This document shows positions 1 through 58,007 of a DNA stretch of 64,000 bases, piece after piece (the first letter of the stretch is position 1; each line of letters begins with the position of its first letter). A program made the translations under genes and the position numbers. Source of the stretch: Podarcis cretensis (lineage: Eukaryota). The DNA lies in the NCBI GenBank assembly GCA_951804945.1, contig OX638164.1:21700001-21764000 (forward strand). Direction: 5' to 3'. Below the pieces are notes generated by a model. That model saw only the letters and a list, made by a program, of their open reading frames with translations, was not told the origin of the DNA and did not search any database.

Positions 1-972
1 ATATAGCAATAAATTTCACACTTCTGGGCAACAAAGAGGTGTTGCCCCTGAGTCTGTCTGCTCAGGCAAGGTCCTTCAACATTGGCAGGTTTTAGATCCC
101 TGGCCCTCATTAAATGTTTCTGCCCTAGCATATATTAATGCACACCTACAAGCGCCATTGATGTGGCTAAATTACAATAAGCTTGAAGCTGAAAGGAGGC
201 GCCCCCCTGATGGCTGCATGGGGAATTAGGGGACTGTCAGGCCTGGGGTCTGGCTTGAAACAGGCCACCATGAAATCTGGGCCCTGGCATGTGGCAATGG
301 GCTTGTGGGCCAGGAACAGGCGGCATAGTCGTGAATGGGCTGGCAGGGGAAAACAGCAGACTGGATTACTGAGGTGAGACAGGGTAGGTCTGGTGTGAGG
401 CTTGGTGAGACATACCAAGGGAAAGTCTTGGTTAAGGAGATGAGTGATTCAGATTTCCAGAGCAGCTCACTAGGAAATGTTTGTAGCAGGACTGGTGAAC
501 CTTTTTCAATCCAAAGGTAGCAGTCTCTTCTGGGCCACTTTCTGGGGGCCACATGCAGTGGCTGGCAGAACCAGAGATAAAGTGGGTGGAGCAACAAATG
601 AAGCAGGGCCCCTGAAGGGTGTGGCCTATGGAGAGAGGGTGTGGCTGGCTGGGAAGGGGTGTGGTGTGGGGAGAGTCCCGAGGGCCAGATAGAGAGGAGT
701 GGAGGGCCACTTTTGCCACGCACCCCTGGCAAAAAAAGGACTGAAGTTCTTTATCCCTGGTTTACAGGGCCCAGTGCCATTCTCTCTGCCTCAGACCCTA
801 GAAAGCCCCTGTCACTCAAAAGTTTGATGGGCAATAGTCTGACCTTTCCATAAGGCAGCTTCCTATTTTCCTAAGCAATGTAATGTTCCCCAGTGAAGGC
901 AAAAGCAATTTGACGAGGTCATAAAATCTGAGACATCAGTAAAGCATTAAGGCTGTTGATCTCTGTTTGTAG

Positions 973-1135
973 GATCTGGTACAGACACTGGATATGGATG
1001 CATTGAAGGGCATGGAAAGGTCCACAGTCGCCAGGGATAGAGCCCAGGTCACCTTCAGTTCAGCCAAGGAGACCCAAGAAAGTGAGAGCTCCTCCATCAA
1101 GCTTTCTGGAGTCTTGCAAGCAAAGGGCTACTCAG
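973..1135 (+). CDS. Uncharacterised large gene, exon ([12 protein letters not shown]...LQAKGYS)
   Basis: tttgtag acceptor, G|gtgag donor, open frame, phase matches next exon. Confidence 0.7.
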
Positions 1136-7100: not shown

Positions 7101-8244
7101 TTCTAAAATGGTTCTGGAGCATGAGCTGCAAATGATCTTGCCAAATTCAGAGAAGCACAAAATCGGAAGGATAGTTGAATTCATAAGCACATGAGGAGAA
7201 CCTGCTGGATTGTGCCAATGAGTCTATCATCCTGTTCTCACAGTGGCCAACTCTATGCCTGTGGGAAACCCTCAAGCAGGGCCTAAGCACAAGAGCCCTC
7301 AACTGGTAGGCAGAAGGATTACTGCCTTTGACTGTGGAGGTGCAGTATGGCCATCATGCCTAATAGCCATTGTCCTGCATAGATTTGCCCAATCCTCTTT
7401 TAAAACCATTCATGTGGGTGGCCTTCACTGTCCCATATAGGAGTGAGTTCCATTGTTGAACTAAGCGCTGCACAAAGAGGTAGTTTCTTTTCTCTATCCC
7501 CGAATTCCTATCCATTACAGTGGTACCTCTGGTTATGTACTTAATTCGTTCTGGAGGTCCGTTCTTAACCTGAAACTGTTCTTAACCTGAAGCACCACTT
7601 TAGCCAATGGGTCCTCCCACTGCCGCTGCACCGCCGGTGCACAATTTCTGTTCTCATCCTGAAGCAAAGTTCTTAACCCGAGGTAATATTTCTGGGTTAG
7701 CAGAGTCTGTAACCTGAAGCGTATGTAACCCGAGGTACCACTGTACATGATATAGGACATGGGTAGGCAAACTAAGGCCCATGGGCCGGATCCGGCCCAA
7801 TTGCCTTTTAAATCCGGCCCACAGATGGTCTGGGAATCAGTGTGTTTTTACATGAGTAGAATGTGTGCTTTTATTTAAAATGCACCTCTGGGTTATTTGT
7901 GGGGCATAGGAATTCGTTCATTTTCCCCAAAAAATATAGTCCGGCCCCCCACAAGGTCTGAGGGACAGTGGACCAGCCCCCTGCTGAAAAGGTTTGCTGA
8001 CCCCTGAATAGAAGTTTTAGAATCAGGCCAATTGATCCAGTGTGGTGTAATGGTTACAGTATATTGCTGGACTAAGACTTGGGAGACCAAAGTTCAAATC
8101 TCCAAGATCACACTGGGTGATCTTGAACATGTCGCCATCTCTCAGCCTAACCTACCTCCCAGGGTTGTTTAGAGGATGAAATTGAGAAAGAGAAAATTGT
8201 ACCCGTCACCTTGCTCTCCTTAGATGAAAAGTGGGATATAATGT

Positions 8245-8296
<52 letters not shown>

Positions 8297-11200
8297 CATA
8301 ATAATTCAGATCAGGATTCACAGAATCTAATTTCTCAGGCATCCCTACCTATTACTACAATCAGAAATAAAAGTTAGAAGTATTAAATTACAGAAAAAGG
8401 CTGCAGAATGTGAGTTGGAAGTTTTTAACTTCTGTGTATGCTTTCTGTTCTTTTGTTTTCAACCCCCAGCTTTTGGGTTGTGAAAAGAAAAACCCAAAAG
8501 CCTGAATTTCAAAGCAGCTGGATGCAAATAAAAATAAAAAAATAATCCCACGATGTCAGCAAAATCTTGGGCGCTCGATATTTCTGATGAATAGACCCTT
8601 TGATTAGGACCTCTAAAAGTTCTGCCTTCTGTGCTGATTCTTTCAGAATCCGATGAAAAATTGCTCGCCTGTTTGTTTAGCTGCTCGGTCGATTTTTGAA
8701 GAACTGCTGAGTCTCCGAATGTTGCCTGACTCTCGTTTCCTTGAGCAACACCCACGGGAAAGGTAGCTGATGTTGGTTTCACTAGATAAGTAATCCAAGA
8801 TTGTGACAGACAAATAATTGTACTCGTGTCATATTGCTGTGTTGCAATATTAGTGCATATATTCCAATAACAAGGGCATTTTTCAGTTGCACAATTGATT
8901 ATTTAGCTTATATAATGTTCCAATTCCTTCTTCCCTATCTCACCGAAATAGAGGAAGCTAGCCCTTTGTAATGAATTTTGTCTGTGTATTTAATATCGGT
9001 ACATATATATTATCTGAAAATGGTCCTGTTTTTCATTTACATCACTGATAACAATTACTGAGCTTAGAGATAATTCTGAGAACAGTCACTGAGCTCAGAT
9101 AATTCTATTGACATCTCCTTCAAGGAAGGGTTTGTGTGGAGTAAACTGCTAATAGTGGGAGCCCCATTTCTTGATAACTGGGCTACTGACAAGGAACAGA
9201 AGACTCTTGGAAAAAGGAGGCATCTGTCAATGTCCATTAGTTGACTCCATGCTTGTAGATTTGTGTCCGAAAGAAACCTTACCACCACTATAGTTTTCTA
9301 TGTGCCAGGCAGAGTCAGTGAATAAGGGTATCAGCTGCATATACACCATGCACCTTCTCTGCCTCCCCCAGAAAGAATCCTGGATAAACTGTTCCCAGGA
9401 TTCTTTTGGGAGTGGAAAACACACTTTAAATGTATGGTGTATGTGTGCAGCCATCTTCTCCTTTCCTAGTTGTAGAAATATTGGCTAGAGGGATCCAAGT
9501 GGTAAGCTGACAGGATCAGGCTTGGGTCAGATCCTGGCAGGCACAGGCAGCAAGTGCATTGGAGGGCCAGACAAAGAGTCTCAAATTGCAAAGGCAAGAG
9601 TTTATCATTTATTTTACTTTGGAAACAGTGTTTGCTGTGATGCAGTAACAAGACTGGGGCAAGATATTTCGGCACCTGTGGCAAACCACAAAATGGTGCA
9701 ACCCCCCCCCCCACACACACACACTAGGGAAGAAGGGGTGAATGAAGATATACATCAAGAAGATATACATCAAGAATGGGCGTGGGGGGGATAAAGATCT
9801 ACACTGGGAAAGTAGGGGAATCAAATCAACTTCACCTGGTGGTTGAAGTGGGAAACAAAGGCTGTCACAGGGCTCTCTCTGAATCATGCTGGATAGGTGC
9901 AGATCCTAGGAGACCCGAAAGGGCAGCCCCTGCCCATTTCCTCCCTAGGGATAGGAGGAGATCAGTACTGTCTCTAATTCAACAAGAAGCTGCTGTAGAG
10001 GCACCATTGGAGGTGCTACTGAAGAGAAGCCAGATCTTACTTCTGGCAACATCAGCAGGCAATGCTCTGCTGCCCCTCTGGATCCTGCCACTCAACATGG
10101 TCTCATCACATATTGCCTCATGGGTGGGCCAGTCCCATGCTATAAGGACCCAGGACCAGCCTGCCAGCAGCCCTGTCCTGCATTTTTTGAAGCAGCTTCT
10201 GGGAGTACAGAATTGCAATAGACAACATCTGAGGATTGTCTGTGTAAATAAATAAGTATGATGCCAGAGGCACATACCATATGCAACATAAGCTTGCTCA
10301 GAAGAATCGCTTAGATAACTGGAGCTATGTAGGGCGATATCCCTGCAGTAAAATGCCTTTCAAAAACCGTTCATTCATTTATCTACAGGATCTCATCTTC
10401 CCTTACAAGCAATGAATCAGACTCTGCCCTTGGGTAATATCCTGATACCAAATACAGGCAATCAACCCAGCAGTGCAGTTGTGCAACATCCATTCTTTTC
10501 CACGGGGATATCTCATAGTTCTCAGAAATTATTCTCAGTCTTCAATTATGCATCAATTATGTCCTCAATAGATAGAGGATTAAGAGACGATGTTGTGGCT
10601 GAAAGAGTTTCTAAGAAAACATGCTCTTACGTTTTTTGCTGGCCCAATGGTGTAAATTGAAAACACTCCACATTGGCCGATCTTGTTATGACCTCATTGC
10701 TCTGTGCAGCCTGCACCTGCCGACCTGTCAGCAACAAGTCAGCTGTATGCAAATTAGTATTAGAATTTTCATGCTTGGCAGTTGGAGGTATAACTGGCCT
10801 CCAGTTCTGGTTCTGCTTAGCTTGGAGCAGCTGGGTGCTGACTGAGCTCCATCAAAACTAAACTGGGGACAGGTTTTTTTTCTTCCTCATCCATCTGTGG
10901 GTTGGTCAGATTGGACACATGTAGCATTTTTCCTATTCTTTAGAAGGCAGAAGCAGTCAGAAATAGCCATGCAGTGGGAAAATGTGGACAAGGTAGGAGG
11001 AAGGTGATGTCTAACAAAACCTCCATGGGTAAAGGAATCTCCTTAGGGTGTTCCAGGCCCAACACACATCATAAGAACATAAGGGCTCTGCTGGATCAGG
11101 CCAGTGGCCCATCTAGTCCAGCGTCCTCTTCTCACAGTGGCCAACCAGAAGCCTGTGGGAAAGCTGCAGGCAGGACTTGAGCCCAAGAGCCCTCTCCCTT

Positions 11201-14200
11201 CCTGCGATCTCCAGCAACTGGTATTCAGATGCATTAATGTATCCAACCATCATGGCTAGTAGCCATGGATGGTCTTCTCCATGAATTTGTCCAGGCCTGT
11301 TTTGCTGGTGGCCATCACTGCCTCTTATGGGAGTGACTTCCATAGTTTAACTATGGACTGTGTGAAAAAGTGCTTTTTTAAAAAATCTGACCTGAATCTT
11401 CAAACATTCAGCTTTAGCTGAAGGTCCACTGGCTCCAGTGAGACAGCGTCCTCCATTGCCTCAGTGATTGATTTAGGCCACCAGGATGTCTGCAATGGCT
11501 CAATAACCTTCTGAAGCAAAGCAGCCATTTCAGGCAAGCTAGATTCTCTGGAACCAGATTGTTCACTTTCTAAACAGGCCCATCCTGCAAATAGCTCTGA
11601 TGTAGTAGCAAGTGTAGAATCTCTCAATTTTTGAATGAGTTAGTAGCAGTTGCACTCCACCCCTAACTCAATTTGGTCTGGGAGTACAGCACTGGTTTAA
11701 TATAACCCTCTCCGTCATGTGGTTCTTCCCTCCGATAAAGGAATGAGCCACAATAGATGATATTGGGAACCTAATGGATGCCTTGCTCCAGGAGGGCTCT
11801 CTAACCAGGTCAATTCTTTTCTCTCCTCTTTCCATCATTTCAAAGCATGGACAGAGAGCTTAATGCTAGCCCTCTGGATGCAGGCAGGTGCAACACACAG
11901 AAAATCCTACTTTCCTTTTTCCCCCTCTCTTCCTGTGTGTCTCAGATTGCAAGATTACAGAAGTTTCCTGCTGCAAGCAGAGCTTCAAAATATAATGGAA
12001 ACTTCAGGGCAACTTGAGGAAAGAGCACACAGCAGTGAGAGGAAGACTTGGGCAGGAGATTCCTCTGACCTTCAGGTAGCTCACTTGACCTTAAATCAAC
12101 TTGGCTCAACCTCCTGTAACTTAGAATAATAGAATTGTAGGGTTGGAAGGGATCTGAAGGGTCATCTAGTTCAGCCCCTTGCAAGACTTGTTTATGTCTG
12201 CTGTGTCAATATCATTTTTCTACAGTGGAAAGGAGTATGAGTTGTCCCATTGCACCTCCTACTTGCTCTAGTAGGTGGGGCCATGTAAATCAGGCTTGTC
12301 CACCATCCACCAGTGGAAGAAGACCCTTCCAGTTCTAGAAGAGTCTTTCTCTGATGTGCAGACCCTTTTTATGGAAATGTGTTGTTTTCTGGTGGCTGCC
12401 TTTTCATACCCCCCTTATGCAGATAGGGTGGGAAGGGGTTATTTATACGATGACTGGCACTTGGCCATTCTGAGCAAAACAATAATGGGCTTGCCAAAAG
12501 GTAAAAGGATGGGCAAAATGACCCCTGGTTCTAGATGAGCTGTTATTCCAAGACTGGAAGGCTCTGGACCCCAGACTACCTATTAAGGGAGATACATGGG
12601 TGACACTGGCCCATGTCTCTGTTGTGTACTTGTGAAAGCTGTGGAGAACCTCCTTTCTGCAGGCCTAATATAGCCTAGCAGTGGTTCTGGTTTGCTGTCT
12701 TCCCCAAGCCATGCCTACCCAGACTATACCGATCTCATCAGGTGGAGGGCAGGCAAAGGCTCCTTGTGGAAGTGGGTTTTGCAGGAGCCTCCCATCAGCC
12801 GACCAGAGTACCCATGGAACCTCTTTTTGCCTGCATGGTTTGATTTCAGATCATTCAGGCAAAAGAAAATGCTTCACTTGACATAATGTGTGTGAAATAG
12901 GTTGTTGACTCATGGGCAGATCTGACCACTGAATGGAAACAGCCCATGGTGTTGGGGGGGGGGGTCAAGATCCAGCCTGCTGGTCAGATCCAGTTCCCCA
13001 CCCTGCTATATAATATGATACAATACCCTTCATGTTTCATAGACTGTCACTCACTGAGGACAGGATAAGGCTATTGCAATGACACAGCATTGTGGTTTAA
13101 CAGCATTGTGGATAACATCAACATGTTATCAAAGAGACATGATGCGGGGAGGGAAGCATAGGTCAGTTCCATCCATGGATCTACCAATGATGTGCAATTT
13201 GGGCATCTGTGTGGCATGCCCAAGTGCATTAGAGGGTAGGGCTCTTGTGTCCTTTTCAGAAGGGCTACTCTTGCCTTTTTAGCAGTAAGAAATGACCTTC
13301 TGCAAATGATGAAAGTCTCTCTTCTACACAACTGTTCCAAAAGCAGCTGTGTCCTCGCTTGCATTTGGCCTCCTTCTTCTTAATGGTTTCCATTTTCTAG
13401 GTGAAGATTGAAGAGCTGGAGGAGATGCTGGATGGCTTGAATGAGGGCTTCTTCCAGCTGACATTGCAGGCCTTAACAATCCAAGAAGAAGAGGAACATC
13501 TGGACCGCGAACTCAGAGCACAAGAGGAGTCACCCTCATTTGCAGTATGTGCATACCACAATTTCATTGCAGGGGGCAGTGATGCAAATGACTATTATTT
13601 TAAATGCAGGTGAATATGCCTTGACAGTGCTCCTTGTATGCAAAGTGCTCAACAACCCAACATCTACACAACAGCCCCATAAGGCTGGGCATTGGGTTTA
13701 AGACTAGGAATGAACTAGGGAATAGTAATTTCGCATCCCTCTTTCAAACTCACTTCACACACATCATATGACAAGTGTGCTTGCTGCATGGATCCCTATG
13801 TCTACAATGATAAAAATGGCAATGCAAAGGAACATTTATTGAAACACTCTGGGGCATGTGGTGGACAAAAACCAGGAAATTGTAAGTTAGTGCCCAAGAG
13901 AGTGAGGCTGGGCAGACAGATCTCACTCATTCTATGATGAAGTTCCTCACTCAACATCTACTAGATAATCTGTTTACATCAGCCTTCCCCACCAGATGTT
14001 CCACGGCAGATGTTTTGGACTACCACCGCCATCAGCCTCCAGCCAGCATATCCAAAACATCTGGAGGGCATCCAGTTGGTTGAAGGTTGGCTTGCCTTCA
14101 TTGAACACTCTTCAGTCACAAACTTGAAGCAAGTGCTTTGTAAGGCATCAGAACTGGAGGAAGGAGGCCACACAGTCTGGTTTGCTCTTCTTGAGTAGCA

Positions 14201-14528
14201 CCAGAGTAATGAGAACCCAGATCTCCTGGTTTACAGCATCTTTCCTCAACCACTATTCCAGTAATTGCTTCAGGACAACTCACTGGCTTTCTTCTGCCTG
14301 TTTCCCACTTCCTCTCCTTCCTCCCCACCCATTGTACAGTCTGCAAGTTGTCTTCCTGAGGAGAAAGCACAGCACTTCTCGGAACATCTTGAATCTTGGG
14401 CTGCCAAGAGAGACCAAAGTGTGTTGCTGGGAATCAAGAGAAGTCTCATTGCGCAGAAAATCAAAGACGTTGAATCGGAACTGGCTCATTGTCTGAAAAT
14501 CCATCATGGTGGTCAGCTCAGCAGCTGA
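973..14528 (+). CDS. 3' part (last 10 coding exons, 532 aa + stop) of a large uncharacterised protein; C-terminus resembles the Gm9195/Gm32742/si:ch211-286b4.4-type giant proteins; 5' part lies upstream of the window
   Basis: Exons 973-1135, 1456-1625, 1726-1804, 2653-2811, 4274-4603, 6904-7022, 8647-8762, 11946-12075, 13401-13544, 14340-14528. All have AG/GT boundaries with matching phases, total 1599 nt with no internal stop, ending TGA at 14526-14528. Family call is recalled from the block [16 protein letters not shown]...[13 protein letters not shown]...[12 protein letters not shown] and is less certain than the gene model. Confidence 0.8.
1456..1625 (+). CDS. Uncharacterised large gene, exon ([18 protein letters not shown]...QQRCP)
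   Basis: ttttag acceptor, CCG|gtaag donor. Confidence 0.7.
1726..1804 (+). CDS. Uncharacterised large gene, exon ([13 protein letters not shown]...CEDQ)
   Basis: gtgtag acceptor, G|gtaag donor. Confidence 0.65.
2653..2811 (+). CDS. Uncharacterised large gene, exon (LDLQPRKSS...[15 protein letters not shown]...)
   Basis: ttgtcag acceptor, G|gtgat donor. Confidence 0.75.
2981..3335 (+). mobile_element. Sauria SINE
   Basis: tRNA-like head GGATGCGGGTGGCATTGTGGGTTAAACC, body with GTGCAAGTAGATAAATAGG, (ACCTTT)n tail. Confidence 0.9.
4078..4213. mobile_element. Short palindromic hAT-type MITE (related copies at about 3940-4068, 56611-56746, 59196-59328)
   Basis: Hairpin-like body around ctacagttcccatcatccct/gatgggagttgtag; TSD tcctagac/tccttgac. 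Confidence 0.7.
4274..4603 (+). CDS. Uncharacterised large gene, exon with the conserved-looking domain ([14 protein letters not shown]...NAMAHIKA)
   Basis: tttttccag acceptor, G|gtata donor, 330 nt open. Confidence 0.85.
4791..5045 (+). mobile_element. hAT-like MITE of about 250 bp (copy 1 of 3)
   Basis: Termini CAGGGGTCAGCAAACT / AGTTTGCCTACCCATG; closely similar copies at 7758 and 42296. Confidence 0.8.
5104..5187. repeat. (TTA)n / (TTAGTA)n microsatellite
   Basis: Seen directly. Confidence 0.95.
5825..6205 (-). mobile_element. Sauria SINE with TSD ttcattgtgata
   Basis: (AAAGGT)n tail on the + strand, full body, TSD at 5813-5824 and 6206-6217. Confidence 0.92.
6904..7022 (+). CDS. Uncharacterised large gene, exon ([27 protein letters not shown]...)
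   Basis: ctcccag acceptor, AAG|gtaat donor. Confidence 0.8.
7518..7743. mobile_element. Tc1/mariner (Tigger-like) MITE
   Basis: TIR CAGTGGTACCTC, TA target duplication. Confidence 0.85.
7758..8006 (-). mobile_element. hAT-like MITE (copy 2 of 3)
   Basis: Reverse complement of the 4791-5045 element. Confidence 0.8.
8245..8295. repeat. (AAC)n microsatellite
   Basis: Seen directly. Confidence 0.95.
8647..8762 (+). CDS. Uncharacterised large gene, exon ([38 protein letters not shown])
   Basis: tttcag acceptor, AG|gtagc donor; supplies the phase 0 to phase 2 link needed between its neighbours. Confidence 0.75.
11070..11410 (-). mobile_element. Ancient CR1/L2-type retroposon 3' remnant (related copies at about 7185-7500, 40730-41000, 45770-45820)
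   Basis: Shared cataagaacataag...ctgctggatcaggcc...cccatctagtccagc motif at several positions. Confidence 0.6.
11946..12075 (+). CDS. Uncharacterised large gene, exon ([18 protein letters not shown]...DLQ)
   Basis: long pyrimidine tract + ctcag acceptor, CAG|gtagc donor. Confidence 0.75.
13401..13544 (+). CDS. Uncharacterised large gene, exon ([20 protein letters not shown]..., coiled-coil-like)
   Basis: ttttctag acceptor, GCA|gtatgt donor. Confidence 0.8.
14340..14528 (+). CDS. Uncharacterised large gene, terminal exon (SASCLPEEK...[14 protein letters not shown]...SS*)
   Basis: pyrimidine tract + tacag acceptor, in-frame TGA. Confidence 0.8.
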
Positions 14529-15200
14529 GGGGAGACTGGCCAAAACTCTGAACCAGCAGGGAGCATTTAGTCGACTGTGTTTATTTCTTGCTGGAGTGAT
14601 CAACTCTTTACTTAAATACCTAAATCTCTTGGGACCTAAAGTATTGCAGTAGGGGTGAATCCAAGTAGCAAATTGGAGGCAACTGTTTTGGATACCAAAT
14701 GGTTTTAGGGCATGTGGATTACAATCTGGGGTCTTCTTATCATTTCTCTTTTTAAAATATTTGGGATCAGAGAGAAGGGGCTTTCAATGGCAGTGAGGGG
14801 ATTTCTCAACTTTTGTTGTAACTTTCAAAAGTTCACCAGTTTGCCTGCTACTGCTCCTTCCTTTCCAGTTAGTATCTAGGAAGGAAATTTTAAGTGCTCA
14901 GTAGATGTGCATTACTGATGTGTTGTGAGCAATATCATGTGAGTATTGTGCAGTTACAGAGTTATAATCCAATGTGCACATGATTTTCTTTGTACTTGCC
15001 AGTTTCAAATGAAAATAGGCAATAACTTTTTCAAAGGAGAAGGGAAGCCAAAAACAGGGTTTGGTCATTGCAGGTGTCAAAAATGAACAGAAGGAAAGGT
15101 GGTTAGTTCTGGCTCAAGATGACTTTGCATGAAAGAGAAGGTATGTATGGAATGTGTACACACAGAGAGGAAGTTTGAAAAATGGCAGTTTTGTTTACAG

Positions 15201-15251: not shown

Positions 15252-16150
15252 TTTTATTTATATCCCGCCCTCCCCAGCCGAAGCTGGGCTCAGGGCAGCT
15301 AACAACAATCAAAATAATCCAACGATTCTAAAAACATTTCATTATAAAAATTAATTAAAATCAAATTGACGGCAACCATTAAGCAAAATTCTGTGCAGAT
15401 TGCCAGAGAAGGGGGGTCAGGCTGCGCCCTGACCAAAGGCCTGGTGGAACAGCTCTGTCTTGCAGGCCCTGCGGAAAGATGTCAACTCCCGCAGGGCCCT
15501 AGTCTCTTGTGACAGAGCGTTCCACCAGATTGGAGCCGTGGCCGAAAAGGCCCTGGCTCTAGTTGAGGCCAGCCTAACCTCTCTGTGGCCTGGGATCTTC
15601 AAGATGTTTTTATTTGCAGACCGTAAGTTCCTCTGTGGGACATACCAGGAGAGGCGGTCCCGTAGGTACGAGGATCCTAGGCCGTATAGGGCTTTAAAGG
15701 TTAAAACCAGCACCTTAAACCTGATCCTGTACTCCACCGGGAGCCAGTGCAGCTGGTATAGTATCGGATGAATGTGATCTCGCAGCAAAGACCCCATAAG
15801 GAGTCTTGCCACGGCATTCTGCACCCGCTGGAGTTTCTGGGTCAGTCTCAAGGGTAGCCCCACATAGAACGAGTTACAATAATCCAGTCTGGAGGTGACC
15901 GTTGCGTGGATCACAGTGACTAGGTCAGGGCGAGAGAGATAAGGAGCCAACTGCTTAGCTTGGCGGAGATGAAAAAATGCCGCCTTTGTTATAGCTGTAA
16001 TCTGCGCCTCCATAGAGAGGGAGGTATCGAAGATTACACCCAAACTCTTAACGGATGATGCTGGCACTAATTGCACCCCCGCAAGAGATGGGAGTTGCCC
16101 CCTCAATCCCATATCGCCCCGTCCCAGCCAGAGGACCTCTGTCTTCAAAG
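15203..16150 (-). mobile_element. L2 LINE 3' fragment with (TAT)n tail
   Basis: ORF with VKSLGVIFD, TSRLDYCNS, LQRVQN, LHWLPV..RI.FK, RAFS..AP..WN motifs typical of L2 ORF2. Confidence 0.9.
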
Positions 16151-17112
16151 GAGACAAAATGACAGTTCTGAATTAATCTGATACACACCCAAAGAGTGGG
16201 TGGACATCTGAAAGGTTGCAGAATCCATAACTGCTAATCTGATGGATGCAGTTGAAAAATACGTGCATTATGTTGTAAAGTCGAGCAAAAATGTTAATTT
16301 CCATGGGAGATAAAAATGCAAATATAATAATGCCACATTTGAGAAATATTTGTTAGGTAGTTTATCTGAAAATCATCATGTAAATATTCAAAATGTGAGA
16401 GGAATCAGGATTGTGGTTGTGCCTCATGCTTCATGTTCTCAGTGGGAAAATAAATTCTGTTTGATCCTGTAACGAGTATCACAATAGTCACTATGAGCAT
16501 CTATAACAGCCGAACCACCTGACAAAGCAGACACTACTTGGAGAGCATTCGGATGTGGGGATTATTGTGTTACTTTGCCTGATTATAATGCTAGCGCCTC
16601 AGATTCTATCCCAGATTCTAATGTTCATTCCTTTTACACTGCATTACCCATTGTGTTATGGAACTGTGGCTTTTTTATTGCTACACTGCCTTTTCACACT
16701 AAATTTTCAATGACGGGAATAGAGCTGTGTGCTGGAATACCTCCCAGAGGTCAAGTGAAATTGCAACACACAAAAAACTCCCGTGCTTTTCTGGGTAACC
16801 GGGGTTGGAGACAGTTTTTCCCCCCCTCTGGAAGCAAATGCTGTGGAAATGAGTGCTAAACTTCTGCTAGATTTTTCCAGAAGTGGCTTTTATGTTGTAT
16901 AAGAGATCATGTGAAATTTGGAAATTATCAGGTAAGGAAATAAATGAAAACAGTATAAATTGCCCTCTGGATGCAGCCTCAGTGCCTCCTGCTACAACTA
17001 AGAGGGCCTAACACACTTTATGTTTGAGAAACATGACACCCGAAGTAGCATAATGGGGTATCCTGTACTTTAATTGGGTGAGTCCCCTTGGGTGGGTTCC
17101 CCATGCTTTAAT

Positions 17113-18205: not shown

Positions 18206-18654
18206 GGAAACAAACCCAAGCAGCACTCAGCAATAAAGACACATGCATGCTGTTTCAGGCTGCTTGGAAAACAGCTACAATATCACTTTCATTTGCAAGG
18301 CTGGTGCAGAATTTGGGAACAAAGGTGGCAATTTACACCTGACCATCCAACGTTTTCCTGGCTCCGTGAGCTACATCAGTCCATCCCAGTTTTGGATTAG
18401 GGCTACTGATAGCAGCCTGCCATTGTCACATCATCCAGAAAGGTAAGTGATGGCTTGGGTCAGCAGGCATTTGTGGGTTGTCCTGCTACATTCTAATGCT
18501 GCATAGAAGAATAGCATGTTTTCCCCTCTCCATGTTCTCAATTCCTGGGCATTTGCTGAGGAGTCAGAGACTTCAACAGCATAATCAAGCTCAGTCTTTT
18601 ATATATTGACTTCATGGCACATTTCTTCCTTTCCCCTTCAGGTTTTCAGCAGAA

Positions 18655-18679
18655 ATGTTTGTAACTGTGCTTCATGGTG
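18655..18679 (+). CDS. CXorf65/C22orf15-like gene, first coding exon (MFVTVLHG)
   Basis: acceptor ttccccttcag ending 18641, gaaATG start, G|gtaagt donor. Confidence 0.8.
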
Positions 18680-21600
18680 GTAAGTGACCTTCTGGCCTTG
18701 AACCTTTGTTGTCTTGCAACAGGTGTGGGGAACCTTTGCCCTCCAAGGTTTGCAGAACTACACATCCCATCAGCCCCAGCAAGCACGGCCAATGGCCAGG
18801 GATGGTGGGAGCCAGCATCTTGAAATAGACTGGGAATCTGTGCAATTGTCTAAACACAGGGGGATACACATTTCCAGCACCTGGACCCAGTTAGCAACCC
18901 CACAGGCTGTATTTTCAGCTAAACTACAGTTTCCTTGCAATCTTCAAGGGCACATTATATTAGTCTAACCTGGAGGTTACAAGCATGTGAATGACAGCTG
19001 TTTCCCTTGGCTTTAACCTTGCATATGTTTTAAATTCATTATCGTTAGGTACTTTGGGAGATGTTTTACTGAAAGGTGGCATATAAATGGTTAAAATTAT
19101 TTTTCTTCAAAAAATGAAATCAATTTTAGCATTTTGTTTTTACATGGTAGAAAACAGGGCAGACATTTTTAACATTCACTGTGAAGTCCAGCGTCTCCTA
19201 GACGGCATCAAACGCCGCTGTGGCTGTGAGGACGAAGGTACAGTAGCTAAAAATCTTTGTGCACTTTGTATGTGTTTTTTTTGGGGGGGGGAGAGTGTGT
19301 ATCCATGCATTTAGATGTTTCAGTGGGTTACACTCACTGATAGTAAGCACCTTGATCCAGCAGAGACTTTGTCAAATCCTGGAGTGTGGAGGCTAATTGA
19401 GACAGCACTCAGTGCTCTGACACAGACATCCAGTCTCCTTGTGAGCATGTTTGCCTTTCTGTTAAAGCCTCCAAGGTATGTAGAAGCACATTCTTCAGAG
19501 AAGGCCTGACACAAATTGAACACGTGCAGAAAGCTCAAAATTTACGTTAGAAAAAAACAGGGATAGCATGTGAATGAATAACACTTGTCAGCTCTTGAAT
19601 CATGTGTTTCAGATGATATAGAGTTAGCAGACGAGAGTGGGCAGGTGAAGAATTTACTCCAGAACAAGCAGCGTTCCGCAACTGAGCTTCTGGGGGAACG
19701 TGAGGCCTATGTGCTCCTGGGTGTTACAAGTAGGTCGCTTGCACCAAATCTCTAGACTCCCATGTGGACAGGTATGGCAGTACAACTGCACAATGTGCAC
19801 CTAAAACCAAGGAAGTCTGAATCCAGTTCTCATGATAATTTATGCACACTGGAATCGGTACTATCTGTGCATGTAAAGGTAAAAGGTAAAGGACCCCTGG
19901 ATGGTTAAGTCCAGTCAAAGGCAACTATGGGATTGTGGCGCTCATCTCGCTTTCAGGCCGAGGGAGCTGGTGTTTGTCCACAGACAGCTTTCTGGGTCAT
20001 GTGGCCAGCATGACTAAACCACTTCTGGCACAACGGAACACCATGACAGAAACCAGAGCAGTGCACGGAAACGCCGTTTACCTTCCCGCCAGAGCGGTAC
20101 CTATTTATCTACTTGCACTTTGATGTGCTTTTGAACTGCTAGGTTGGCAGTAGCTGGGACCGAGCAATGGGAGCTCACCCTGTTGCAAGGATTCAAACTG
20201 CCAACCTTCCCAAGCCCAAGAGACTTAGTGGTTTAGACCGCAAGTTTAGACCTTTACCTGTGCATGTACAGATATGTGCACAAATGCACAGTTTTGCCTG
20301 TAAGGTCTGCTGCTGTGGGCCCTGAAACACTTTGCAAGAAGGTGAGCAGTTCCCTATTGCTTACAATTCTGCATTTGGGTCCACAAAGTGTAGCTACTTC
20401 TAGTGTTCTTTGCAGCCAATCCTATGCCTGTCACTCAGAGGCAAGGATAGGTGGATCTGTCTATTTTACCTCTGAGTCAATTTTGCATGCTTTCATTCCA
20501 CCCCATTTTCCTATGTATCTATGATTTTATAAAGAAAAATCTGCCTGAAAAACCATATTTAAAAACATATTTAACAATGTAAAGTATTTTATTAGAAAAC
20601 ATGTATTTCAGCATGTATGGGATCTCTTTTTTTTTTAATAATAATTTTTATTCGTTTTTCAAACAGATAACAAAAGTACCACAAAACAACATAATTTCCA
20701 ACTGATCGTTTCATACCCTTCTTTCTTTTGACTTCCCCATACCTCCCCATCCCTGCATTCTTGTTTAGTGATTCTTTAGCAACCCTTAGGTCCATTATCT
20801 TAATTCCCTTTCATAAAAGTTCCTTTAGTTTTTTTTTATTACTGCTGCAATTTCTTTACCTCTTACCCCCTGACATCTTAACATTCGTCAATTTTACAAT
20901 TGTTCTTGAGATATATTTTAAATTTCTTCCAGTCCTCTTCCACTGTCTCTTTCCCCTGGTCACGGATTCTGCCCGTCATCTCGGCCAGTCCCATAAAGTC
21001 AATCACCTTTGTTTGCCATTCTTCCAGAGTAGGTAGTTCTTGCGTCTTCCAATACTTTGCCAGTAGAATTCTTGCTGCTGTGGTGGCATACATAAAGAAA
21101 ATCCTATCCTTCTTTAACACCAATTGGCCAACCATGCCCAAGAGAAAAGCCTCTGGTTTCTTAGGAAAACTCCACCTAAGGACCTTCTTAATTTCATTAT
21201 AGATCATTTCCCAGAAAGCTTTAATCTTTGGGCAGGTCCACCAAAGGTGGTAAAAAGTGCCTTCAGTCTCATTACATTTCCAACACTTATTGTTAGGCAA
21301 ATGATAAATTTTTGCAAGCTTGACTGGGGTCATGTACCACCGATAGATCATTTTCATAATATTTTCTTTTAAAGCATTACATGCAGTAAATTTGATACCG
21401 GTGGTCCATAACTGTTCCCAGTCAGCAAACATAATATCATGACCGATATCTTGTGCCCATTTAATCATAGCTGATTTCACCGTTTCATCCTGTGTATTCC
21501 ATTTCAACAGCAAGTTATACATTTTTGATAAATTCTTAGTATTGGGTTCCAACAGTTCTGTTTCTAATTTTGACTTCTCTTTCTGAAATCCTATTTTTCT

Positions 21601-24600
21601 GTCCTGTTTAAATGTCTCATTTATCTGATGATAATGCAACCAATCTCGAACCTTAGGCTTTAGTTTCTCATAACTCTGAAGTTTCACCCTTTCACCATCA
21701 TATTCTAAAATTTCATGATATTTTGGCCATTTAGAGTCCATATTAAGCTTTTTTACTTCCCTAGCTTCCATTGGTGACACCCACCTAGGGGTTTTACTTT
21801 CCAGCAGATCTTTATATCTAATCCAAACGTTATACAATGCTTTCCTCACAATATGGTTTTTAAAACTTTTGTACACCTTTACCTTGTCATACCATAAATA
21901 TGCATGCCAACCAAAACTATTGTCATACCCTTCCAGGTCCAAAATGTCAGTGTTCTCAAGAAGTAGCCAGTGTTTCAACCAGCAGAAAGCTGCCGATTCA
22001 TAGTAAAGTCTTAAGTCCGGCAGGGCAAACCCCCCTCTATCCTTCGCATCAGTTAAAATCTTAAATTTAATTCTGGGCTTTTTGCCCTGCCAGACAAATT
22101 TTGATATGTCTTTCTGCCACTTCTTGAAACAATCCATCCTGTCCAAAATCTGTAACGTCTGAAATAAAAACAGCATTCTAGGCAATACATTCATCTTAAT
22201 AGTAGCAATTCGGCCTAACAAGGAAAGTTTCAACCTTGACCATATTTCCAGATCTTTCTTAACCTCTGCCCAAGTTTTTTCATAATTATCCTTAAATAAA
22301 TTCACATTCTTGGATGTTAAGTTTAACCCCAGGTATTTTACCCTTTTTGTTATTTCCAGGCCTGTTTCATTCTGAAAACTCTCTCTTTCTTCCATTGTTA
22401 AGTTTTTTTCCAACACTTTCGTTTTTTGTTTGTTCAATTTAAAACCTGCTACTCGACCAAATATTTCAATTAATTCTAATACTCTTTTAGTACTAGTGTC
22501 TGGCTGTTGCAAAGTCAATACTAGGTCATCTGCAAATGCTCTTAACTTGTAATGTCTAACTCCGACCTGAACTCCTTTAACCAACTGGTCCTTTCTAATC
22601 ATGTTTAACAAAACCTCCAGGACTGATATAAAAAGCAAAGGGGATATTGGGCATCCCTGCCGTGTACCTTTTTCTATAGGTATTTCTTCTGTAACCACAT
22701 TGTTTACAATTAGCTTGGCCTTTTGTTGAGAATATATTGCACCTATACCGTTTTCAAAACCTTGACCTACCCCCATCCCTTGGAGATTTTTTTTCATAAA
22801 AGTCCAGCAGATATTGTCAAAGGCTTTCTCCGCGTCTACAAAAATCAGGACTGCTTTCCTGTTAATGTCAACATCTAGCAATTCTAAAATGTCTATAATG
22901 TTCCTCACATTGTCTGACATATATCTCCCTGGGAGAAAGCCTGTTTGGTCCTTATGAATCTCCTCTATCAACACTCTTTTCAATCTTTTTGCCAAAATGT
23001 CTGCAAAAAATTTGTAATCCACATTGAGCAAAGATATAGGGCGGTAGTTTCTAACCTGGTTCTTCTCAGCTTCTGTCTTCGGTATAAGTGAGATAAAAGC
23101 CTCTTTCCACGATTCAGGTGCCTTTTTCCCCTTCAGGATTTCATTGCAAACTTCCTTCAATGGTTGTATTAAACATTCTTTCAGCATCTTGTAGTATTTA
23201 GCCGTCAGGCCATCTGGTCCTGGTGATTTTCCCAATTTCATATTTTGAATGGCACCCTCTATTTCTTGTTCTATTTCCTCATTTAGAGTCCTTTTACTTT
23301 GTTCTGGAATTTTTGGTAAGCCGTATTTTCTGATGAATTCTTCTATTTCTTGTTCATTAATTGGCCCTTGTGCATACAATTTCTTAAAAAAGCTTTGAAA
23401 GCAATTGTTTATCTCATTAGGTTTGTGGATAATTTTCCCATCCATTTCTAAACTGGTTACCGTGTTCATTTTCTGCCTTTTCTTCAATTGCCATGACAGA
23501 AGTTTCCCACACTTGTCCGCTGATTCGAAGGTTCTTTGTCTCTTTTGCTTTATCTTCCATTCTATTTGTTGGTTCATAAGCTCCATGTACTGCATCTGAT
23601 AAAACTTTATTTCTCTCAGAATCTCATGAGACTTTGGTTTGGACCTCAATTTCTTCTCTCCTTCTTTTATTTTTTCTAGGATTTTTTCCTTCCTCTCATT
23701 TTGTTGCTTCCTCTTTATAGAGTTCTGTTGAATTAGGAAACCTCGCATCACGGCTTTGCTTGTGTCCCAAATTATTCTTTTCTCCACATCTGTTTTCCTG
23801 TTAATCTCGAAATAATCTTTTAATGTTTTAAGGGCCTTCTTATGGATCTCTTCATCCTTAAATAGGGTGTCATTCATTCTCCATCTAAAGGATCCAGTTG
23901 TTGTTAGTTTCATCTCCATCTTCACCGCATTATGGTCGGAGCAAGTTTTTGGGCATATTTCTACTTTTTTTGTTCTTGACGCCAGACTACTAGAAATCCA
24001 AATTTGGTCTATTCTTGTCCATGTCATTTTTGCCTCAGAGAAGAAAGTTCCCTCTCTCTCTAGAGGATTCCTTGTTCTCCAAATATCAATCAAGTCCAGA
24101 GTTTCAGTCATTTCAAAAAAGATCTTTGGTAGTCTCCCTTCTTTTGAGATCACTTGTCTCTGTGCCTTATCCATGTTTGTTGAGACAACTCCAATGCCGT
24201 GTTCTAAACCGAATCTCAATGCCCGTGTTTCTAAACCGATTTTATATACATTTTAAAGCTCCTTTTGGTTAAAAAAAAAATTAACCAAGAACAGTATTGC
24301 AAAATTTGGAAAAATCTAGTGTTCTGATCTACACTCTAGTCCAAGAGATGAAAATCAAATTGGTTCATGTGAGAATTTGTGGAAATCCATTTTTTCAACC
24401 AGCTCTACTTGTGAGTGAGAACCCACTGAAAATAAGTTTTGCTTCTAATAGAATGTGCTTAGTTAGAACAACGATGCTAGCCACAGCTGTGATGGGCAGC
24501 TGTTCTGCCATGTCTTTGCCAGATAGCTCAACTCTTGCGCTTTATTCTGACTGCTAAACAGGACATTCCATCCCTACCCCTAACCACACACTATAATTGT

Positions 24601-26606
24601 TCTTTACTTTTGCCCTTTCCAGGAGGTGAAAGGCCTTCCAAGAGAGTATTTACACCTCTGTTGAAAGATGAGTCCGTCATTAATGCTAAGTTCCTAGGTA
24701 GGTGGGTGAACTTGCCTCCATTTATCTATGCAATTTGAAAAGCATCTTCAAATGTCAGTTTGTTGTTGTTTAGTCGTTTAGTCTTGTCTGACTCTTTGTG
24801 ACCCCATGGACCAGAGCACGCCAGGCACTCCTGTCTTCCACTGCCTCCCGCAGTTTGGTCAAACTCATGCTGGTAGCTTCGAGAACACTGTCCAACCATC
24901 TCGTCCTCTGTCGTCCCCTTCTCCTTGTGCCCAGGGTCTTTTCTAGGGAGTCTTCTCTTCTCATGCAAATGTCAGCAGTGGCGTAGCGTGGGGGTGCAGG
25001 GGGGGGCCGGCTGCACCGGGCGCAACATCTGGGGGTTAGGGTTAGGGGGCGCAAATCCACGGGTTAGGGGGCGCAAATTACTTGCCTTGCCCCGGGTGCT
25101 GACAACCCACGCTACGCCACTGAATGTCAGTAGTCAGCCAGAATTGCCATCAGGGCCCAGGGACTGACAACTGTGTGCACTTGCCAGTGAAAGAAGCTAA
25201 GCTTTGTCTGTCCCTGAGCCTAGTTGGCCCTGTCAAAGATGGATCGGTGCCTCTGGACAAAAATACACCTCCCATGCCAAAGAGACATGCCCATTTTCAA
25301 TGTAGGACAATAACTATTCAGAAATGTGGCTTGCCTCTTTGGAACTGGGAACTAGGTTTGTAAAAGGTCCAGCTGTACACTCTGCATGCACATGTCCCTT
25401 TTTAGATCTTCCACCTTCAGATGCAACCAAGAAGGGGTAAAGGGTTTTATGCCCCTTTGATTTCAGTGGAAAATAGGTGAGTGAAACTTTTATGTATACA
25501 TTTTATACTGCTGTCAGAATAGCAGTGGTTTGAGAGCTTTCCATCACTGCTGTGTGGAAACTTCTGGTGGCATCACAGAGGGTGGTCTGTAGCATCATGA
25601 GGACCTTCAGCCACTGTGCCAGAGGGCAGAAGACTGCTCCCTTAGTTAGATAATTGCTGATCCTCTATCTCGCTTTTTCATTGCACCGTTGAATTGCTTT
25701 GGTGAATTATATATTTCTCCTACCTGAAGCTAAGCTAGAGAGCTGGCAAGAGCGCAAAGTCCCCTCTCCGAGAGTAAAATCCAGAAAGACCAACAAAAAA
25801 GCAACCTTGGATATCCCAGCTGCTGAAGGTGAGCTTATAATTATTAAAGAGAACCTCCAGTTTATGACCTTTTGTGAGTCTTGATGGCTAATATAGAATC
25901 ATAAAATGAGTAGAGTTGGAAGGGATTCAGAGGAGCAATTCAGGAAAGATGGCATGTGTTAAATATGGAGAAGTGGAATTACATTTTTAGCCAAGTGAGA
26001 TTAACAAGCACCTTCAGAATCCATAATCAACTTGGTTTACTTATTGTAACCCAGCTATAGCATATGAATTTCAAAACTAGCAGCTCCTTCCCTGAGGACT
26101 GCCAGTCTTTTCATTGTCCAGGGGCAGTCAAGGAACAACGGCCAGGCACTGCAAGTTGCTTCAGGTGAACTGCTGGGTTGAGATATAAGCTTAAAACATA
26201 TTCAATGAATAATGGGTTGCTTTCCCCCTAACATGGTCACAACCAGATTTTAAAGGGTTATATGTATCACCTCAATGTCATCATTTAATGCTAGTTGAAG
26301 ATTGAAGATTGTTGTTGTTTAACATCAAGCAGTATATAAATTTTATGAATTAAATAAATAAATAAGTATTTAATGACCATTCTCTGAATGTACGGTTTGT
26401 TTTACATACAGAGACCAAACTTGACAAAAATCTCACGTTATTGTCCATATTTGCATGAAGTATTTGCTTTCACCACCTTGTTCACAGACGCGTTGGTGCT
26501 TACATGATTATTGTCTCTTTCCACTGTAGGCTTAAGGAATCATTCGCCTCACGGCAGCAGGACAAGAACGCCTGTTGCTTCTCCAAAACAAAGCAGAAAA
26601 TTATGA
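18655..26606 (+). CDS. CXorf65/C22orf15-family small protein (159 aa, 6 coding exons)
   Basis: Exons 18655-18679, 19151-19237, 19613-19729, 24623-24697, 25730-25828, 26530-26606. All introns are GT-AG and phase 1; 480 nt open. Protein: MFVTVLHGENRADIFNIHCEVQRLLDGIKRRCGCEDEDDIELADESGQVKNLLQNKQRSATELLGEREAYVLLGVTRGERPSKRVFTPLLKDESVINAKFLAKLESWQERKVPSPRVKSRKTNKKATLDIPAAEGLRNHSPHGSRTRTPVASPKQSRKL. The pattern MF-x-x-x-x-HG...N-x-x-C...I-x-L-x-D-x-x-G...A-x-x-x-L-x-x-R-x-x-Y-V...F-x-PLL matches my recollection of CXorf65/C22orf15. Confidence 0.85.
19151..19237 (+). CDS. CXorf65/C22orf15-like gene, coding exon 2
   Basis: ggtag acceptor, G|gtacag donor, CpG-rich coding-like composition. Confidence 0.85.
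19613..19729 (+). CDS. CXorf65/C22orf15-like gene, coding exon 3
   Basis: gtttcag acceptor, A|gtaggt donor. Confidence 0.85.
19876..20257 (-). mobile_element. Sauria SINE with TSD ctgtgcatgta
   Basis: Same body and tail; TSD at 19865-19875 and 20258-20268. Confidence 0.9.
20628..24193 (-). mobile_element. L1-clade LINE, 5'-truncated; ORF2 with partial endonuclease, reverse transcriptase and C-terminal CCHC region
   Basis: ORF 20878-24219 has TRIDQIW/SDH endonuclease end, GPDG, YRPISLLN, DAEKAFD, GTRQGCPISP, FADD, YLG and CWKC...H...C motifs; 3' UTR and A-rich tail near 20628. Confidence 0.95.
24623..24697 (+). CDS. CXorf65/C22orf15-like gene, coding exon 4 (RVFTPLLK)
   Basis: ccctttccag acceptor, G|gtaggt donor. 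Confidence 0.85.
24759..24965 (-). mobile_element. Bov-B LINE short 3' fragment with TSD caaatgtcag
   Basis: RGRQRTRWLDSV...EDRSAWRALVHGVTKSQTRL; TSD at 24749-24758 and 24966-24975. Confidence 0.9.
24976..25122 (+). mobile_element. hAT-type MITE with internal TTAGGG-containing repeats
   Basis: TIR CAGTGGCGTAGCGTGG / CCACGCTACGCCACTG, 8-bp TSD aatgtcag. Confidence 0.9.
25730..25828 (+). CDS. CXorf65/C22orf15-like gene, coding exon 5 (basic tail)
   Basis: ttctcctacctgaag acceptor, G|gtgagc donor, phase continuity. Confidence 0.7.
26530..26606 (+). CDS. CXorf65/C22orf15-like gene, last coding exon
   Basis: ctctttccactgtag acceptor, in-frame TGA at 26604-26606. Confidence 0.7.
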
Positions 26607-27791
26607 TCTCTTGTTGGATCTGAAATCGGAATCTCTTCCAGTTTGTGGAAATGCACCTGTTCATGTATGTTCCAGCGTGTCCCCTGCTCTGAGCTTGAGT
26701 CCACATAACAAGGCAGGCCAGGATTCTGAAGCCTGCATTATAATTCGCTGCCTTGGCACAAAACAGCCAATCAGGTGTGAGGTGGGGCTGGCTGAAGTGT
26801 ATATAAATCAGATCCTGTCCCCTGTTTCCCTCAATCTGTTTCTGATGTCTTACTAAAGCCTTTAAGCTGAAATGCTGCCTCTCGCTCGAACCAAAGCTGG
26901 ATCTAGACACATCAAAAAAGCGTTTCAGTTAAACGCGTACATTTAAACAGGGAAATCCGGTAGGTAAAAACGGGACTCCACAGCACCATCTGGTGGCACA
27001 GTGTTATATTGCATATACAACACATATAAATTGCTTTTTCTTTACCAATCTAGCTGAGTCCCTACGTATACCTTTTTCTGTTTCTTTGTGCAAATGTGAA
27101 TTTTTAGGCACCTTACCTGACAATAAGGTGCCTTGAATGCTGTAGGACTTACTTCTGAGTAAACAGGGATTATAACATTGTACTGTAGATGTGCTTGATT
27201 GGACAGGGTTGGGGAACCTGTGATCCTCCAGATGTTTCTTTTTGTCTCAATATGTACAAGTTTGACTAAGGTTAATTCAACAAAAGGCATTCTCCACTAT
27301 GTTTCTCGCTCTTTGCCTCAACCGTTGTAGGAACAATTTTGTGAGTCAGCCAGTGCTACAGCCATTCTGCACCAGAATTCCCCAAGGCTTATTTCTGAGA
27401 GTTGTTTCCAATCTTACTCCTCCTAGAAATAGTAATAAAAAGAGATGGTGCTTTTGAGCACACTGGTGATATTTCACAGTCAAGGGAAGCTGCTATACCA
27501 AGGATGGTGCAAGACTGTTAAGGAATGATGTATGGAGATGTGAGAAACCAGGTCATGACCTTCTCCAAAGAACAGATTAATAAATAATATTTTTAGAAAT
27601 AATACAACAAAATCCAAAATACAGTTCACCAAGGAATAAATTCCTCTGTTCCATCCAGACTTCTTTTAGGTCAGTCAGATGACTTTGAAACTAAATGGTT
27701 ATTGGCTAATGTTGACATTTAAAAAAAATTAGTTTATTGTATTGCATTTCTTTCCGACCAAGCTGGTACATGGTTCTCCCCTTCTCATTTA

Positions 27792-33127: not shown

Positions 33128-58007
<24,880 letters not shown>

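What the first reader, a model, noticed from the sequence alone, without database searches (positions are those of the whole stretch)
18655..26606. Hidden 159-aa CXorf65/C22orf15-family gene built from six small phase-1 exons
Seen: six exons of 25, 87, 117, 75, 99 and 77 nt with canonical splice sites join into one ORF that the six-frame track never shows whole. Recalled: the first ~100 aa follow the CXorf65/C22orf15 pattern, followed by a basic S/P-rich tail. In humans those two genes are on X and 22, not beside ATP12A on chromosome 13. Inference: this may be a third, little-described paralog kept in reptiles, and its N-terminal strand-strand-helix pattern suggests a ubiquitin-like beta-grasp fold.
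Basis: partly seen in the sequence, partly recalled or inferred. Interest (0 to 1): 0.8.

Follow-up and report, generated by a model that had tools for sequence, protein, structure and literature searches.

The report
Lizard CXorf65-like gene, already annotated
The six small exons form a real, spliced gene for a 159-residue protein with a ubiquitin-like domain and a basic tail, but related lizards already have it annotated as "CXorf65 homolog", and whether it is a separate paralog of the mammalian gene stays open.

Summary
Six exons (25, 87, 117, 75, 99 and 77 nt), all phase 1 with AG/GT borders, give an open 159-codon frame. Pfam PF15874 (the CXorf65 family) matches exons 2 and 3 in order. 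Transcript contigs from related species carry the exon 4-5 and 5-6 junctions, plus an in-frame skip of exon 5.

The gene is not hidden. Podarcis muralis (97% identical over all six exons) and Lacerta agilis already list it in RefSeq as "uncharacterized protein CXorf65 homolog". So do more than 100 other species, from corals to birds.

A tree of 57 sequences follows the species tree, with one copy per vertebrate. No mammal appears among the listed hits, although corals do.

AlphaFold2 on the Podarcis stand-in gives a confident beta-grasp domain. Two structure aligners return only ubiquitin-like domains, at modest scores.

The downstream convergent neighbour is ATP12A.

Human 13q12 and Xq13 are known paralogous blocks, so a duplicate lost in mammals is about as likely as a relocated, fast-evolving ortholog.

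The parts
18655..18679 (+). Coding exon 1 (25 nt): ATG and MFVTVLHG, followed by donor GTAAGT
   Evidence: The MF[IV]TVL start is nearly invariant in 62 homologs.
19151..19237 (+). Exon 2 (87 nt, phase 1): strand 2 and helix 1 of the beta-grasp domain
   Evidence: Pfam PF15874 E 5e-5, profile 5-31. 100% identical to Podarcis P0024.
19613..19729 (+). Exon 3 (117 nt, phase 1): the most conserved block (ELADESGQVKNL ... ERE.YVLL)
   Evidence: Pfam PF15874 E 2e-7, 31.4 bits against a cut-off of 27. 13 hits in the search of 1.84 billion proteins.
24623..24697 (+). Exon 4 (75 nt, phase 1): last strand (FTPLL) and the start of the KFLAKL helix
   Evidence: 96% identical to P0024. Donor 24697 is joined to 25730 and to 26530 in transcript contigs.
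25730..25828 (+). Exon 5 (99 nt, phase 1): end of the helix and the basic tail (9 K/R in 32 residues). It is a cassette exon, skipped in frame in some transcripts.
   Evidence: Joints 24697|25730 (X2), 25828|26530 (X1, X2, X5) and the skip 24697|26530 (X1). Lacerta agilis isoform X4 (P0036) lacks it.
26530..26606 (+). Exon 6, coding part (77 nt including TGA): Ser/Pro-rich basic end, ...SPKQSRKL
   Evidence: The tail ending SPKQS[RK]K is shared by squamates and turtles.
26607..26869 (+). 3' UTR, minimum extent
   Evidence: Transcript contigs of X1 and X2 run unbroken from 26528 to 26869 and then continue with unlike letters (tables 7 and 8). The true end was not determined.
18614..18664 (+). 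Upstream ATG, out of frame with the main ATG, opening a 16-codon uORF that overlaps the start codon. In Podarcis and Lacerta agilis the same ATG is in frame and gives RefSeq's 17-residue N-terminal extension.
19700..19729 (+). Last 30 nt of exon 3, removed when the internal donor C|GTGAGG at 19699|19700 is used. The loss is in frame and deletes much of strand 4.
   Evidence: The sequence is. Podarcis isoform X2 (P0030) reads ...ELLGER|GERPSK, exactly as this donor predicts. Its use in this species was not shown.

Best explanation
This is a genuine, transcribed and correctly spliced protein-coding gene. It is the lacertid copy of the gene that RefSeq calls 'uncharacterized protein CXorf65 homolog' (Pfam PF15874). 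It belongs to a slowly evolving group that has one copy per vertebrate and runs from cnidarians through sharks, ray-finned fishes, amphibians, turtles and birds to squamates. No mammal was seen in that group. It lies tail-to-tail with ATP12A. Shown here: the protein has an N-terminal ubiquitin-like beta-grasp domain of about 105 residues, ending in a conserved KFLAKL helix, followed by a basic, Ser/Pro-rich tail of about 50 residues that is predicted to be disordered. Inferred: the domain has no C-terminal Gly-Gly at its end, so the protein is not a conjugated modifier. It most likely acts as a small adaptor whose ubiquitin-like domain docks a partner protein, while the basic tail (KSRKTNKK, SPKQSRKL) carries it into the nucleus, as shown for the C-terminal NLS of mouse Gm614. 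It probably acts in germ cells. I put that functional part at about 0.35; the confidence given below refers to the identity of the gene.
For: Gene model. Family: and precomputed PF15874 on all homologs. Splicing: GT..AG joints at both tested junctions in runs from two organisms, while introns differ about 4% from the window and exon 5 about 1%. Orthologs: P0024 is 97% identical over all six exons. The tree of 57 sequences has a vertebrate clade at 100/99 support that follows the species tree. Fold: pLDDT above 90 over residues 17-125 of P0024 and below 50 in the tail. All top Foldseek and VIA-align matches are ubiquitin-like domains. Tail composition. Function by analogy: mouse Gm614 is nuclear, with an NLS at residues 172-191 (PMC7609865). 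Human CXorf65 falls with spermatid genes in azoospermia data sets (PMC8875138). The chicken homolog was noted in a testis study (PMC12373746).
Against: The fold scores are modest: Foldseek's best E is 2.7e-3 and VIA's best Z is 7.5, which the tool calls middling. The structure was predicted for the Podarcis stand-in, not the window's own joined product. The runs are only guessed to be RNA and their tissues are unknown. Junctions 1-2, 2-3 and 3-4 rest on homology and on RefSeq models of relatives, not on reads. The functional analogy uses mouse Gm614, whose orthology to this gene is unproven. No partner, localisation or phenotype is known for this lineage.
Confidence: 0.88

Rival explanations
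1. The ATP12A-side gene and mammalian CXorf65 would be duplicates from the two early vertebrate genome duplications, sitting at matching places in the paralogous 13q12-type and Xq13-type blocks. Mammals lost the conserved 13-type copy and kept the divergent X-type copy.
For: The ParaHox region on human chromosome 13 has paralogous regions on X, 4 and 5 from the genome duplications (PMC2944030 and PMC4471637). From my own knowledge, several gene pairs link 13q12-q14 with Xq13 (CDX2/CDX4, GJB2/GJB1, ZMYM2/ZMYM3, SLC7A1/SLC7A3, FOXO1/FOXO4). No mammalian protein reaches even the level of coral proteins in the profile searches. RefSeq gives these genes LOC numbers, not orthology-based symbols.
Against: This needs the X-type copy to have been lost, or to have gone undetected, in sharks, ray-finned fishes, amphibians and sauropsids. 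The word-limited searches found no species with both copies. No tree with mammalian sequences could be built.
Confidence: 0.45
2. A relocated 1:1 ortholog. The gene would be the direct ortholog of mammalian CXorf65, which moved next to IL2RG on the mammalian stem and then evolved fast.
For: The taxonomic distribution is complementary as far as seen. There is one copy per non-mammalian vertebrate and the tree follows the species tree, with mammals as the only gap. RefSeq names the gene by best similarity to CXorf65. The architecture is shared with mouse Gm614: a small protein with a basic C-terminal NLS tail.
Against: The neighbour here is ATP12A, not IL2RG. A move into the very block that is paralogous to the source would be a coincidence. 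The gene would also need a sudden, large rate increase after more than 600 million years of slow change.
Confidence: 0.45
3. It is the ortholog of C22orf15.
Against: C22orf15 flanks VPREB3 in all tetrapods studied except chicken (PMC9614664), whereas this gene flanks ATP12A. Nearly all sources name the group after CXorf65.
Confidence: 0.04
4. It is a chance ORF or a decaying pseudogene.
For: None beyond the small size of the exons.
Against: The frame is open, the family matches in order, the protein is 97% identical to a RefSeq protein, transcripts are spliced, and the gene is conserved from corals to birds.
Confidence: 0.01

Closest known systems
RefSeq 'uncharacterized protein CXorf65 homolog' of lacertids (Podarcis muralis LOC114585458, P0024/P0030; Lacerta agilis isoform X4, P0036)
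   Same: The same six-exon product: 92-100% identity per exon, the same split-codon residues and the same exon-5-skipped isoform.
   Different: In the window the upstream ATG is out of frame, so RefSeq's 17-residue N-terminal extension is replaced by a short overlapping uORF.
Mammalian CXorf65 / mouse Gm614
   Same: The same Pfam family according to its name and RefSeq labels. Both are small proteins with a basic C-terminal tail, and Gm614 carries an NLS there and is nuclear (PMC7609865).
   Different: In mammals the gene lies on the X chromosome, which I know from memory and did not test. Here the neighbour is ATP12A. No mammalian sequence appeared in any listed search result, so identity and tree position are unknown.
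C22orf15
   Different: It sits beside VPREB3 in tetrapods (PMC9614664), so it is a different locus.
Ubiquitin-like beta-grasp domains (ubiquitin, SUMO, Elongin B, TBK1 ULD, BAG6 UBL, doublecortin, Par3 NTD)
   Same: The predicted order of strands and helix, and the best structural matches (TMt 0.54-0.68; Z 6.3-7.5).
   Different: Sequence identity is only 4-19%. There is no Gly-Gly end. The domain has an extra conserved C-terminal helix and two invariant cysteines. The PDB profile search found no sequence match.

Membership tests
Pfam PF15874 (Il2rg, the CXorf65 family) | Match to the family profile above Pfam's gathering score (27 bits) | tested here: met
   Exon 3 alone scores 31.4 bits (E 2e-7). 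Exon 2 adds 23.9 bits on the adjoining part of the profile. All full-length orthologs carry a precomputed PF15874 hit.
Pfam PF15874 (Il2rg, the CXorf65 family) | Conserved N-terminal MF[IV]TV start and the LADxxGxxKNL and ERE..VLL motifs along the whole domain | tested here: met
   Alignments A1 and A2. 34 positions are at least 90% conserved in 62 sequences, and the window's exon translations carry them.
1:1 ortholog of mammalian CXorf65 | Tree position as sister to mammalian CXorf65 inside tetrapods | not testable with these tools
   No mammalian sequence was among the listed hits of the three word searches.
1:1 ortholog of mammalian CXorf65 | Conserved neighbourhood (IL2RG, FOXO4, MED12) | tested here: not met
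   The downstream convergent neighbour is ATP12A. Ten upstream ORFs gave no Pfam match, so the upstream neighbour remains unidentified.
Ortholog of C22orf15 | Position beside VPREB3 (PMC9614664) | tested here: not met
   The window shows ATP12A downstream and no recognised immunoglobulin-type neighbour.
Ubiquitin-like beta-grasp fold | The beta-beta-alpha-beta-beta-beta core, with best structural matches to ubiquitin-like domains | tested here: met
   AF2 pLDDT above 90. All top Foldseek rows (best E 2.7e-3) and all 50 VIA rows (Z up to 7.5) are beta-grasp domains. The scores are modest, so this holds at the level of fold class only, and it was done on stand-in P0024.
Conjugated ubiquitin-like modifiers | Exposed C-terminal Gly-Gly directly after the last strand | tested here: not met
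   After the FTPLL strand come a helix and a 50-residue tail, and there is no Gly-Gly.

The most novel reading that the evidence does not exclude
The ATP12A-side gene is the direct, slowly evolving descendant of an ancient single-copy animal gene that mammals have lost. Mammalian CXorf65 is its duplicate in the X-linked paralogous block. If so, every non-mammalian 'CXorf65 homolog' label asserts the wrong orthology, and the best-conserved member of the family has no mammalian counterpart.
Probability: 0.45. Interest if true: 0.45.

Novelty: already known. Interest (0 to 1): 0.3.

Why it matters
The gene model needs no correction and is ordinary annotation. The open point is modest but real. 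A small ubiquitin-like protein has been kept nearly unchanged from corals to birds, yet nothing comparably conserved turned up in mammals, where the only studied relatives (CXorf65/Gm614) are divergent. If the two are duplicates and not orthologs, results from mouse Gm614 should not be carried over to other vertebrates. The conserved form would then have to be studied in a frog, bird, lizard or invertebrate model.

Tried and rejected
1. Fetching mammalian CXorf65 or C22orf15 failed. I ran a word search with the full-length ortholog P0001, a profile of 30 sequences and a profile of 15 maximally diverse sequences at the loosest E-value allowed (one search was a parameter slip that I corrected). 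No mammal was listed. The 32 weakest hits were neither printed nor saved.
3. The protein atlas returned only PF15874 cluster names, without ids.
4. A PDB profile search found no sequence relative.
5. The scan's notes on this genome hold nothing on IL2RG, VPREB3, FOXO4, MED12, CHCHD10 or RNF17.
6. No paper mentions both CXorf65 and ATP12A, and none treats the family's evolution.
7. Pfam found nothing for exons 4-6 alone or for ten ORFs upstream.
8. I rejected a chance ORF, a pseudogene and C22orf15 orthology; the reasons are under the rival explanations.
Podarcis P0024 stood in for it.
Full report
**The observation**

The window has no N. The six exons lie at 18655-18679, 19151-19237, 19613-19729, 24623-24697, 25730-25828 and 26530-26606 on the + strand. 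Exons 2-6 are preceded by AG and exons 1-5 are followed by GT. All five junctions are phase 1. The parts add up to 480 nt, which is 159 codons plus TGA with no internal stop.

That script only counted frame and stops. The joined product was neither printed nor saved. All searches used single exons by reference. Full-length work used a database protein as a stand-in.

**Family**

Pfam PF15874 ("Il2rg", the CXorf65 family) matches exon 2 at E 5e-5 on profile positions 5-31. It matches exon 3 at E 2e-7 and 31.4 bits, above the 27-bit cut-off, on positions 34-71. The two matches are in the same order as the exons. Exons 4-6 have no Pfam match on their own.

**Transcripts**

I laid four runs on 24400-26900. 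The contigs show GT..AG joints at 24697|25730 (X2) and at 25828|26530 (X1, X2 and X5, from two organisms). One contig joins 24697|26530, which skips the 99-nt exon 5 in frame.

- Other contigs keep intron sequence, as pre-mRNA would.
- The runs differ from the window by about 4% in introns and about 1% in exon 5, so they come from related species, and the exon looks constrained.
- The runs are only guessed to be RNA, and their tissues are coded.
- The 3' UTR reaches at least 26869.
- Junctions 1-2, 2-3 and 3-4 were not covered by reads.

**Relatives**

The large HMMER search with exon 3 gave 13 hits. Among them is a full-length skink transcript product, P0001. Word and profile searches with P0001 and with alignments A1 and A3 found more than 150 proteins. 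All of them carry PF15874, and nearly all named ones are called "uncharacterized protein CXorf65 homolog" or "CXorf65-like".

- Groups covered: squamates, turtles, birds, frogs, salamanders, a caecilian, bichirs, gar, bowfin, sturgeon, an eel, catfishes, sharks and rays, amphioxus, a sea cucumber, an acorn worm, molluscs, a brachiopod, a nemertean and many cnidarians.
- The window comes from a lacertid. Podarcis muralis P0024 matches the six exon translations at 100, 100, 97, 96, 97 and 92%, in order, including the split-codon residues E, D, R, A and G.
- Lacerta agilis isoform X4 (P0036) is identical in exons 1, 2, 3 and 6 and lacks exon 5.

So the gene is already annotated and is not hidden.

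**Tree**

A maximum-likelihood tree of 57 sequences has a vertebrate clade at 100/99 support. Inside it, sharks and rays, ray-finned fishes, amphibians, then turtles plus birds and squamates follow the species tree. Each vertebrate has one copy; cnidarians have two or three.

Mammals are the only major vertebrate group absent from all listed hits, although coral proteins score about 1e-40. The 32 weakest hits were not listed or saved.

**Neighbours**

- On the minus strand, exons at 46122-46502 (E1-E2 ATPase) and 38286-38807 (hydrolase end) belong to a P-type ATPase whose 3' end points at our gene.
- The first of these exons scores 145.5 bits against solved ATP12A (7x20), compared with 124.6 or less for ATP4A-derived chains and about 118 for ATP1A1. 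The second also ranks ATP12A first, by a small margin.
- Ten upstream ORFs gave no Pfam match.
- Intron 3 holds an antisense, intact 1113-codon reverse-transcriptase ORF, which is a LINE.

**Structure**

AlphaFold2 on alignment A2 (62 sequences, P0024 first) gave pLDDT above 90 for residues 17-125, below 50 for the first 15 residues (most of the 17-residue N-terminal extension) and below 50 for the last 38. The elements run strand, strand, helix, strand, strand, strand, helix.

- Foldseek against the PDB returned Elongin B, SUMO1/2/3, ubiquitin variants, ISG15 and a UBX domain. The best E was 2.7e-3 and none reached 0.001.
- VIA-align against 48,161 chains returned 50 rows, all beta-grasp domains: ubiquitin, the TBK1 ULD, BAT3, ISG15, Dsk2, Hub1, doublecortin and the Par3 NTD. 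Z ranged from 6.3 to 7.5, which the tool calls middling.

- There is no Gly-Gly after the last strand.
- Two cysteines, Cys19 and Cys32, are invariant in the 62 sequences; their role is unknown.
- Conservation falls from exon 1 (0.89) and exon 3 (0.75) to exon 6 (0.39).
- Exons 5 and 6 encode 15 Lys/Arg against 4 Asp/Glu, and four Ser/Thr-Pro sites.

**How it likely works**

Shown: a ubiquitin-like domain followed by a basic tail that is predicted to be disordered.

Inferred: a non-conjugated adaptor whose domain binds a partner and whose tail acts as a nuclear localisation signal or a nucleic-acid contact.

- The analogy is mouse Gm614, which is nuclear, has an NLS at residues 172-191 and binds the caspase-1 promoter (PMC7609865).
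- Human CXorf65 falls together with spermatid genes in azoospermia data (PMC8875138).
- The chicken homolog came up in a testis study (PMC12373746).
- I put this functional reading at about 0.35. A microtubule or cilium role is a weaker alternative, suggested only by doublecortin-type matches that are tied with ubiquitin.

**Paralog or ortholog**

- C22orf15 is unlikely, because it flanks VPREB3 in tetrapods (PMC9614664).
- For a duplicate lost in mammals: the ParaHox region on human chromosome 13 has paralogous regions on X, 4 and 5 from the early genome duplications (PMC2944030 and PMC4471637). From my own knowledge, several gene pairs link 13q12-q14 with Xq13, where CXorf65 lies. No mammalian protein is close to this group.
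- For a relocated, accelerated ortholog: the distribution is complementary, with one copy per non-mammal.
- I rate the two as about equal.

**Limits**

**Verdict**

Its family and fold class are supported. It is already annotated in related lizards, and the paralog claim remains open.

Noticed in passing
window 20878-24219 (-), inside intron 3: An intact 1113-codon ORF with a reverse-transcriptase domain (RVT_1, E 2e-35). It is a full-length-looking LINE ORF2, antisense to the gene, in a low-GC stretch with strong strand skew.
   Followed up: partly
window about 24740-25150, intron 4: A short interspersed repeat with very high contig depth in all four runs. The part at 24968-25122 is absent from the contigs of organism A (joint 24967|25123), so it is an insertion or deletion difference between related species.
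   Followed up: no
window 18614-18664 (+): The upstream ATG that RefSeq uses for a 17-residue N-terminal extension in Podarcis and Lacerta agilis is out of frame here. It opens a 16-codon uORF that overlaps the main start codon.
   Followed up: partly
window 19699|19700 (+): An internal donor, C|GTGAGG, in exon 3 matches Podarcis isoform X2. That isoform drops 10 residues from strand 4 of the domain and so probably does not fold.
   Followed up: partly
window 38286-38807 (-) and 46122-46502 (-): Exons of a P-type ATPase whose best match among solved structures is ATP12A (7x20). The gene is convergent with the CXorf65-like gene.
   Followed up: yes
window 15417-16157 (-): A 246-codon ORF with no Pfam match. 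Its sequence looks like the C-terminal part of a retrotransposon ORF2, but this was not tested.
   Followed up: no
window 1-14600: Another note of the scan places the C-terminus of a large uncharacterised protein here. The ten longest ORFs I tried gave no Pfam match, so the upstream neighbour remains unidentified.
   Followed up: partly
homologs P0111/P0121/P0140 and P0113/P0139: The sea anemone Exaiptasia has three loci of this family and the snail Babylonia has two, whereas each vertebrate has one.
   Followed up: partly
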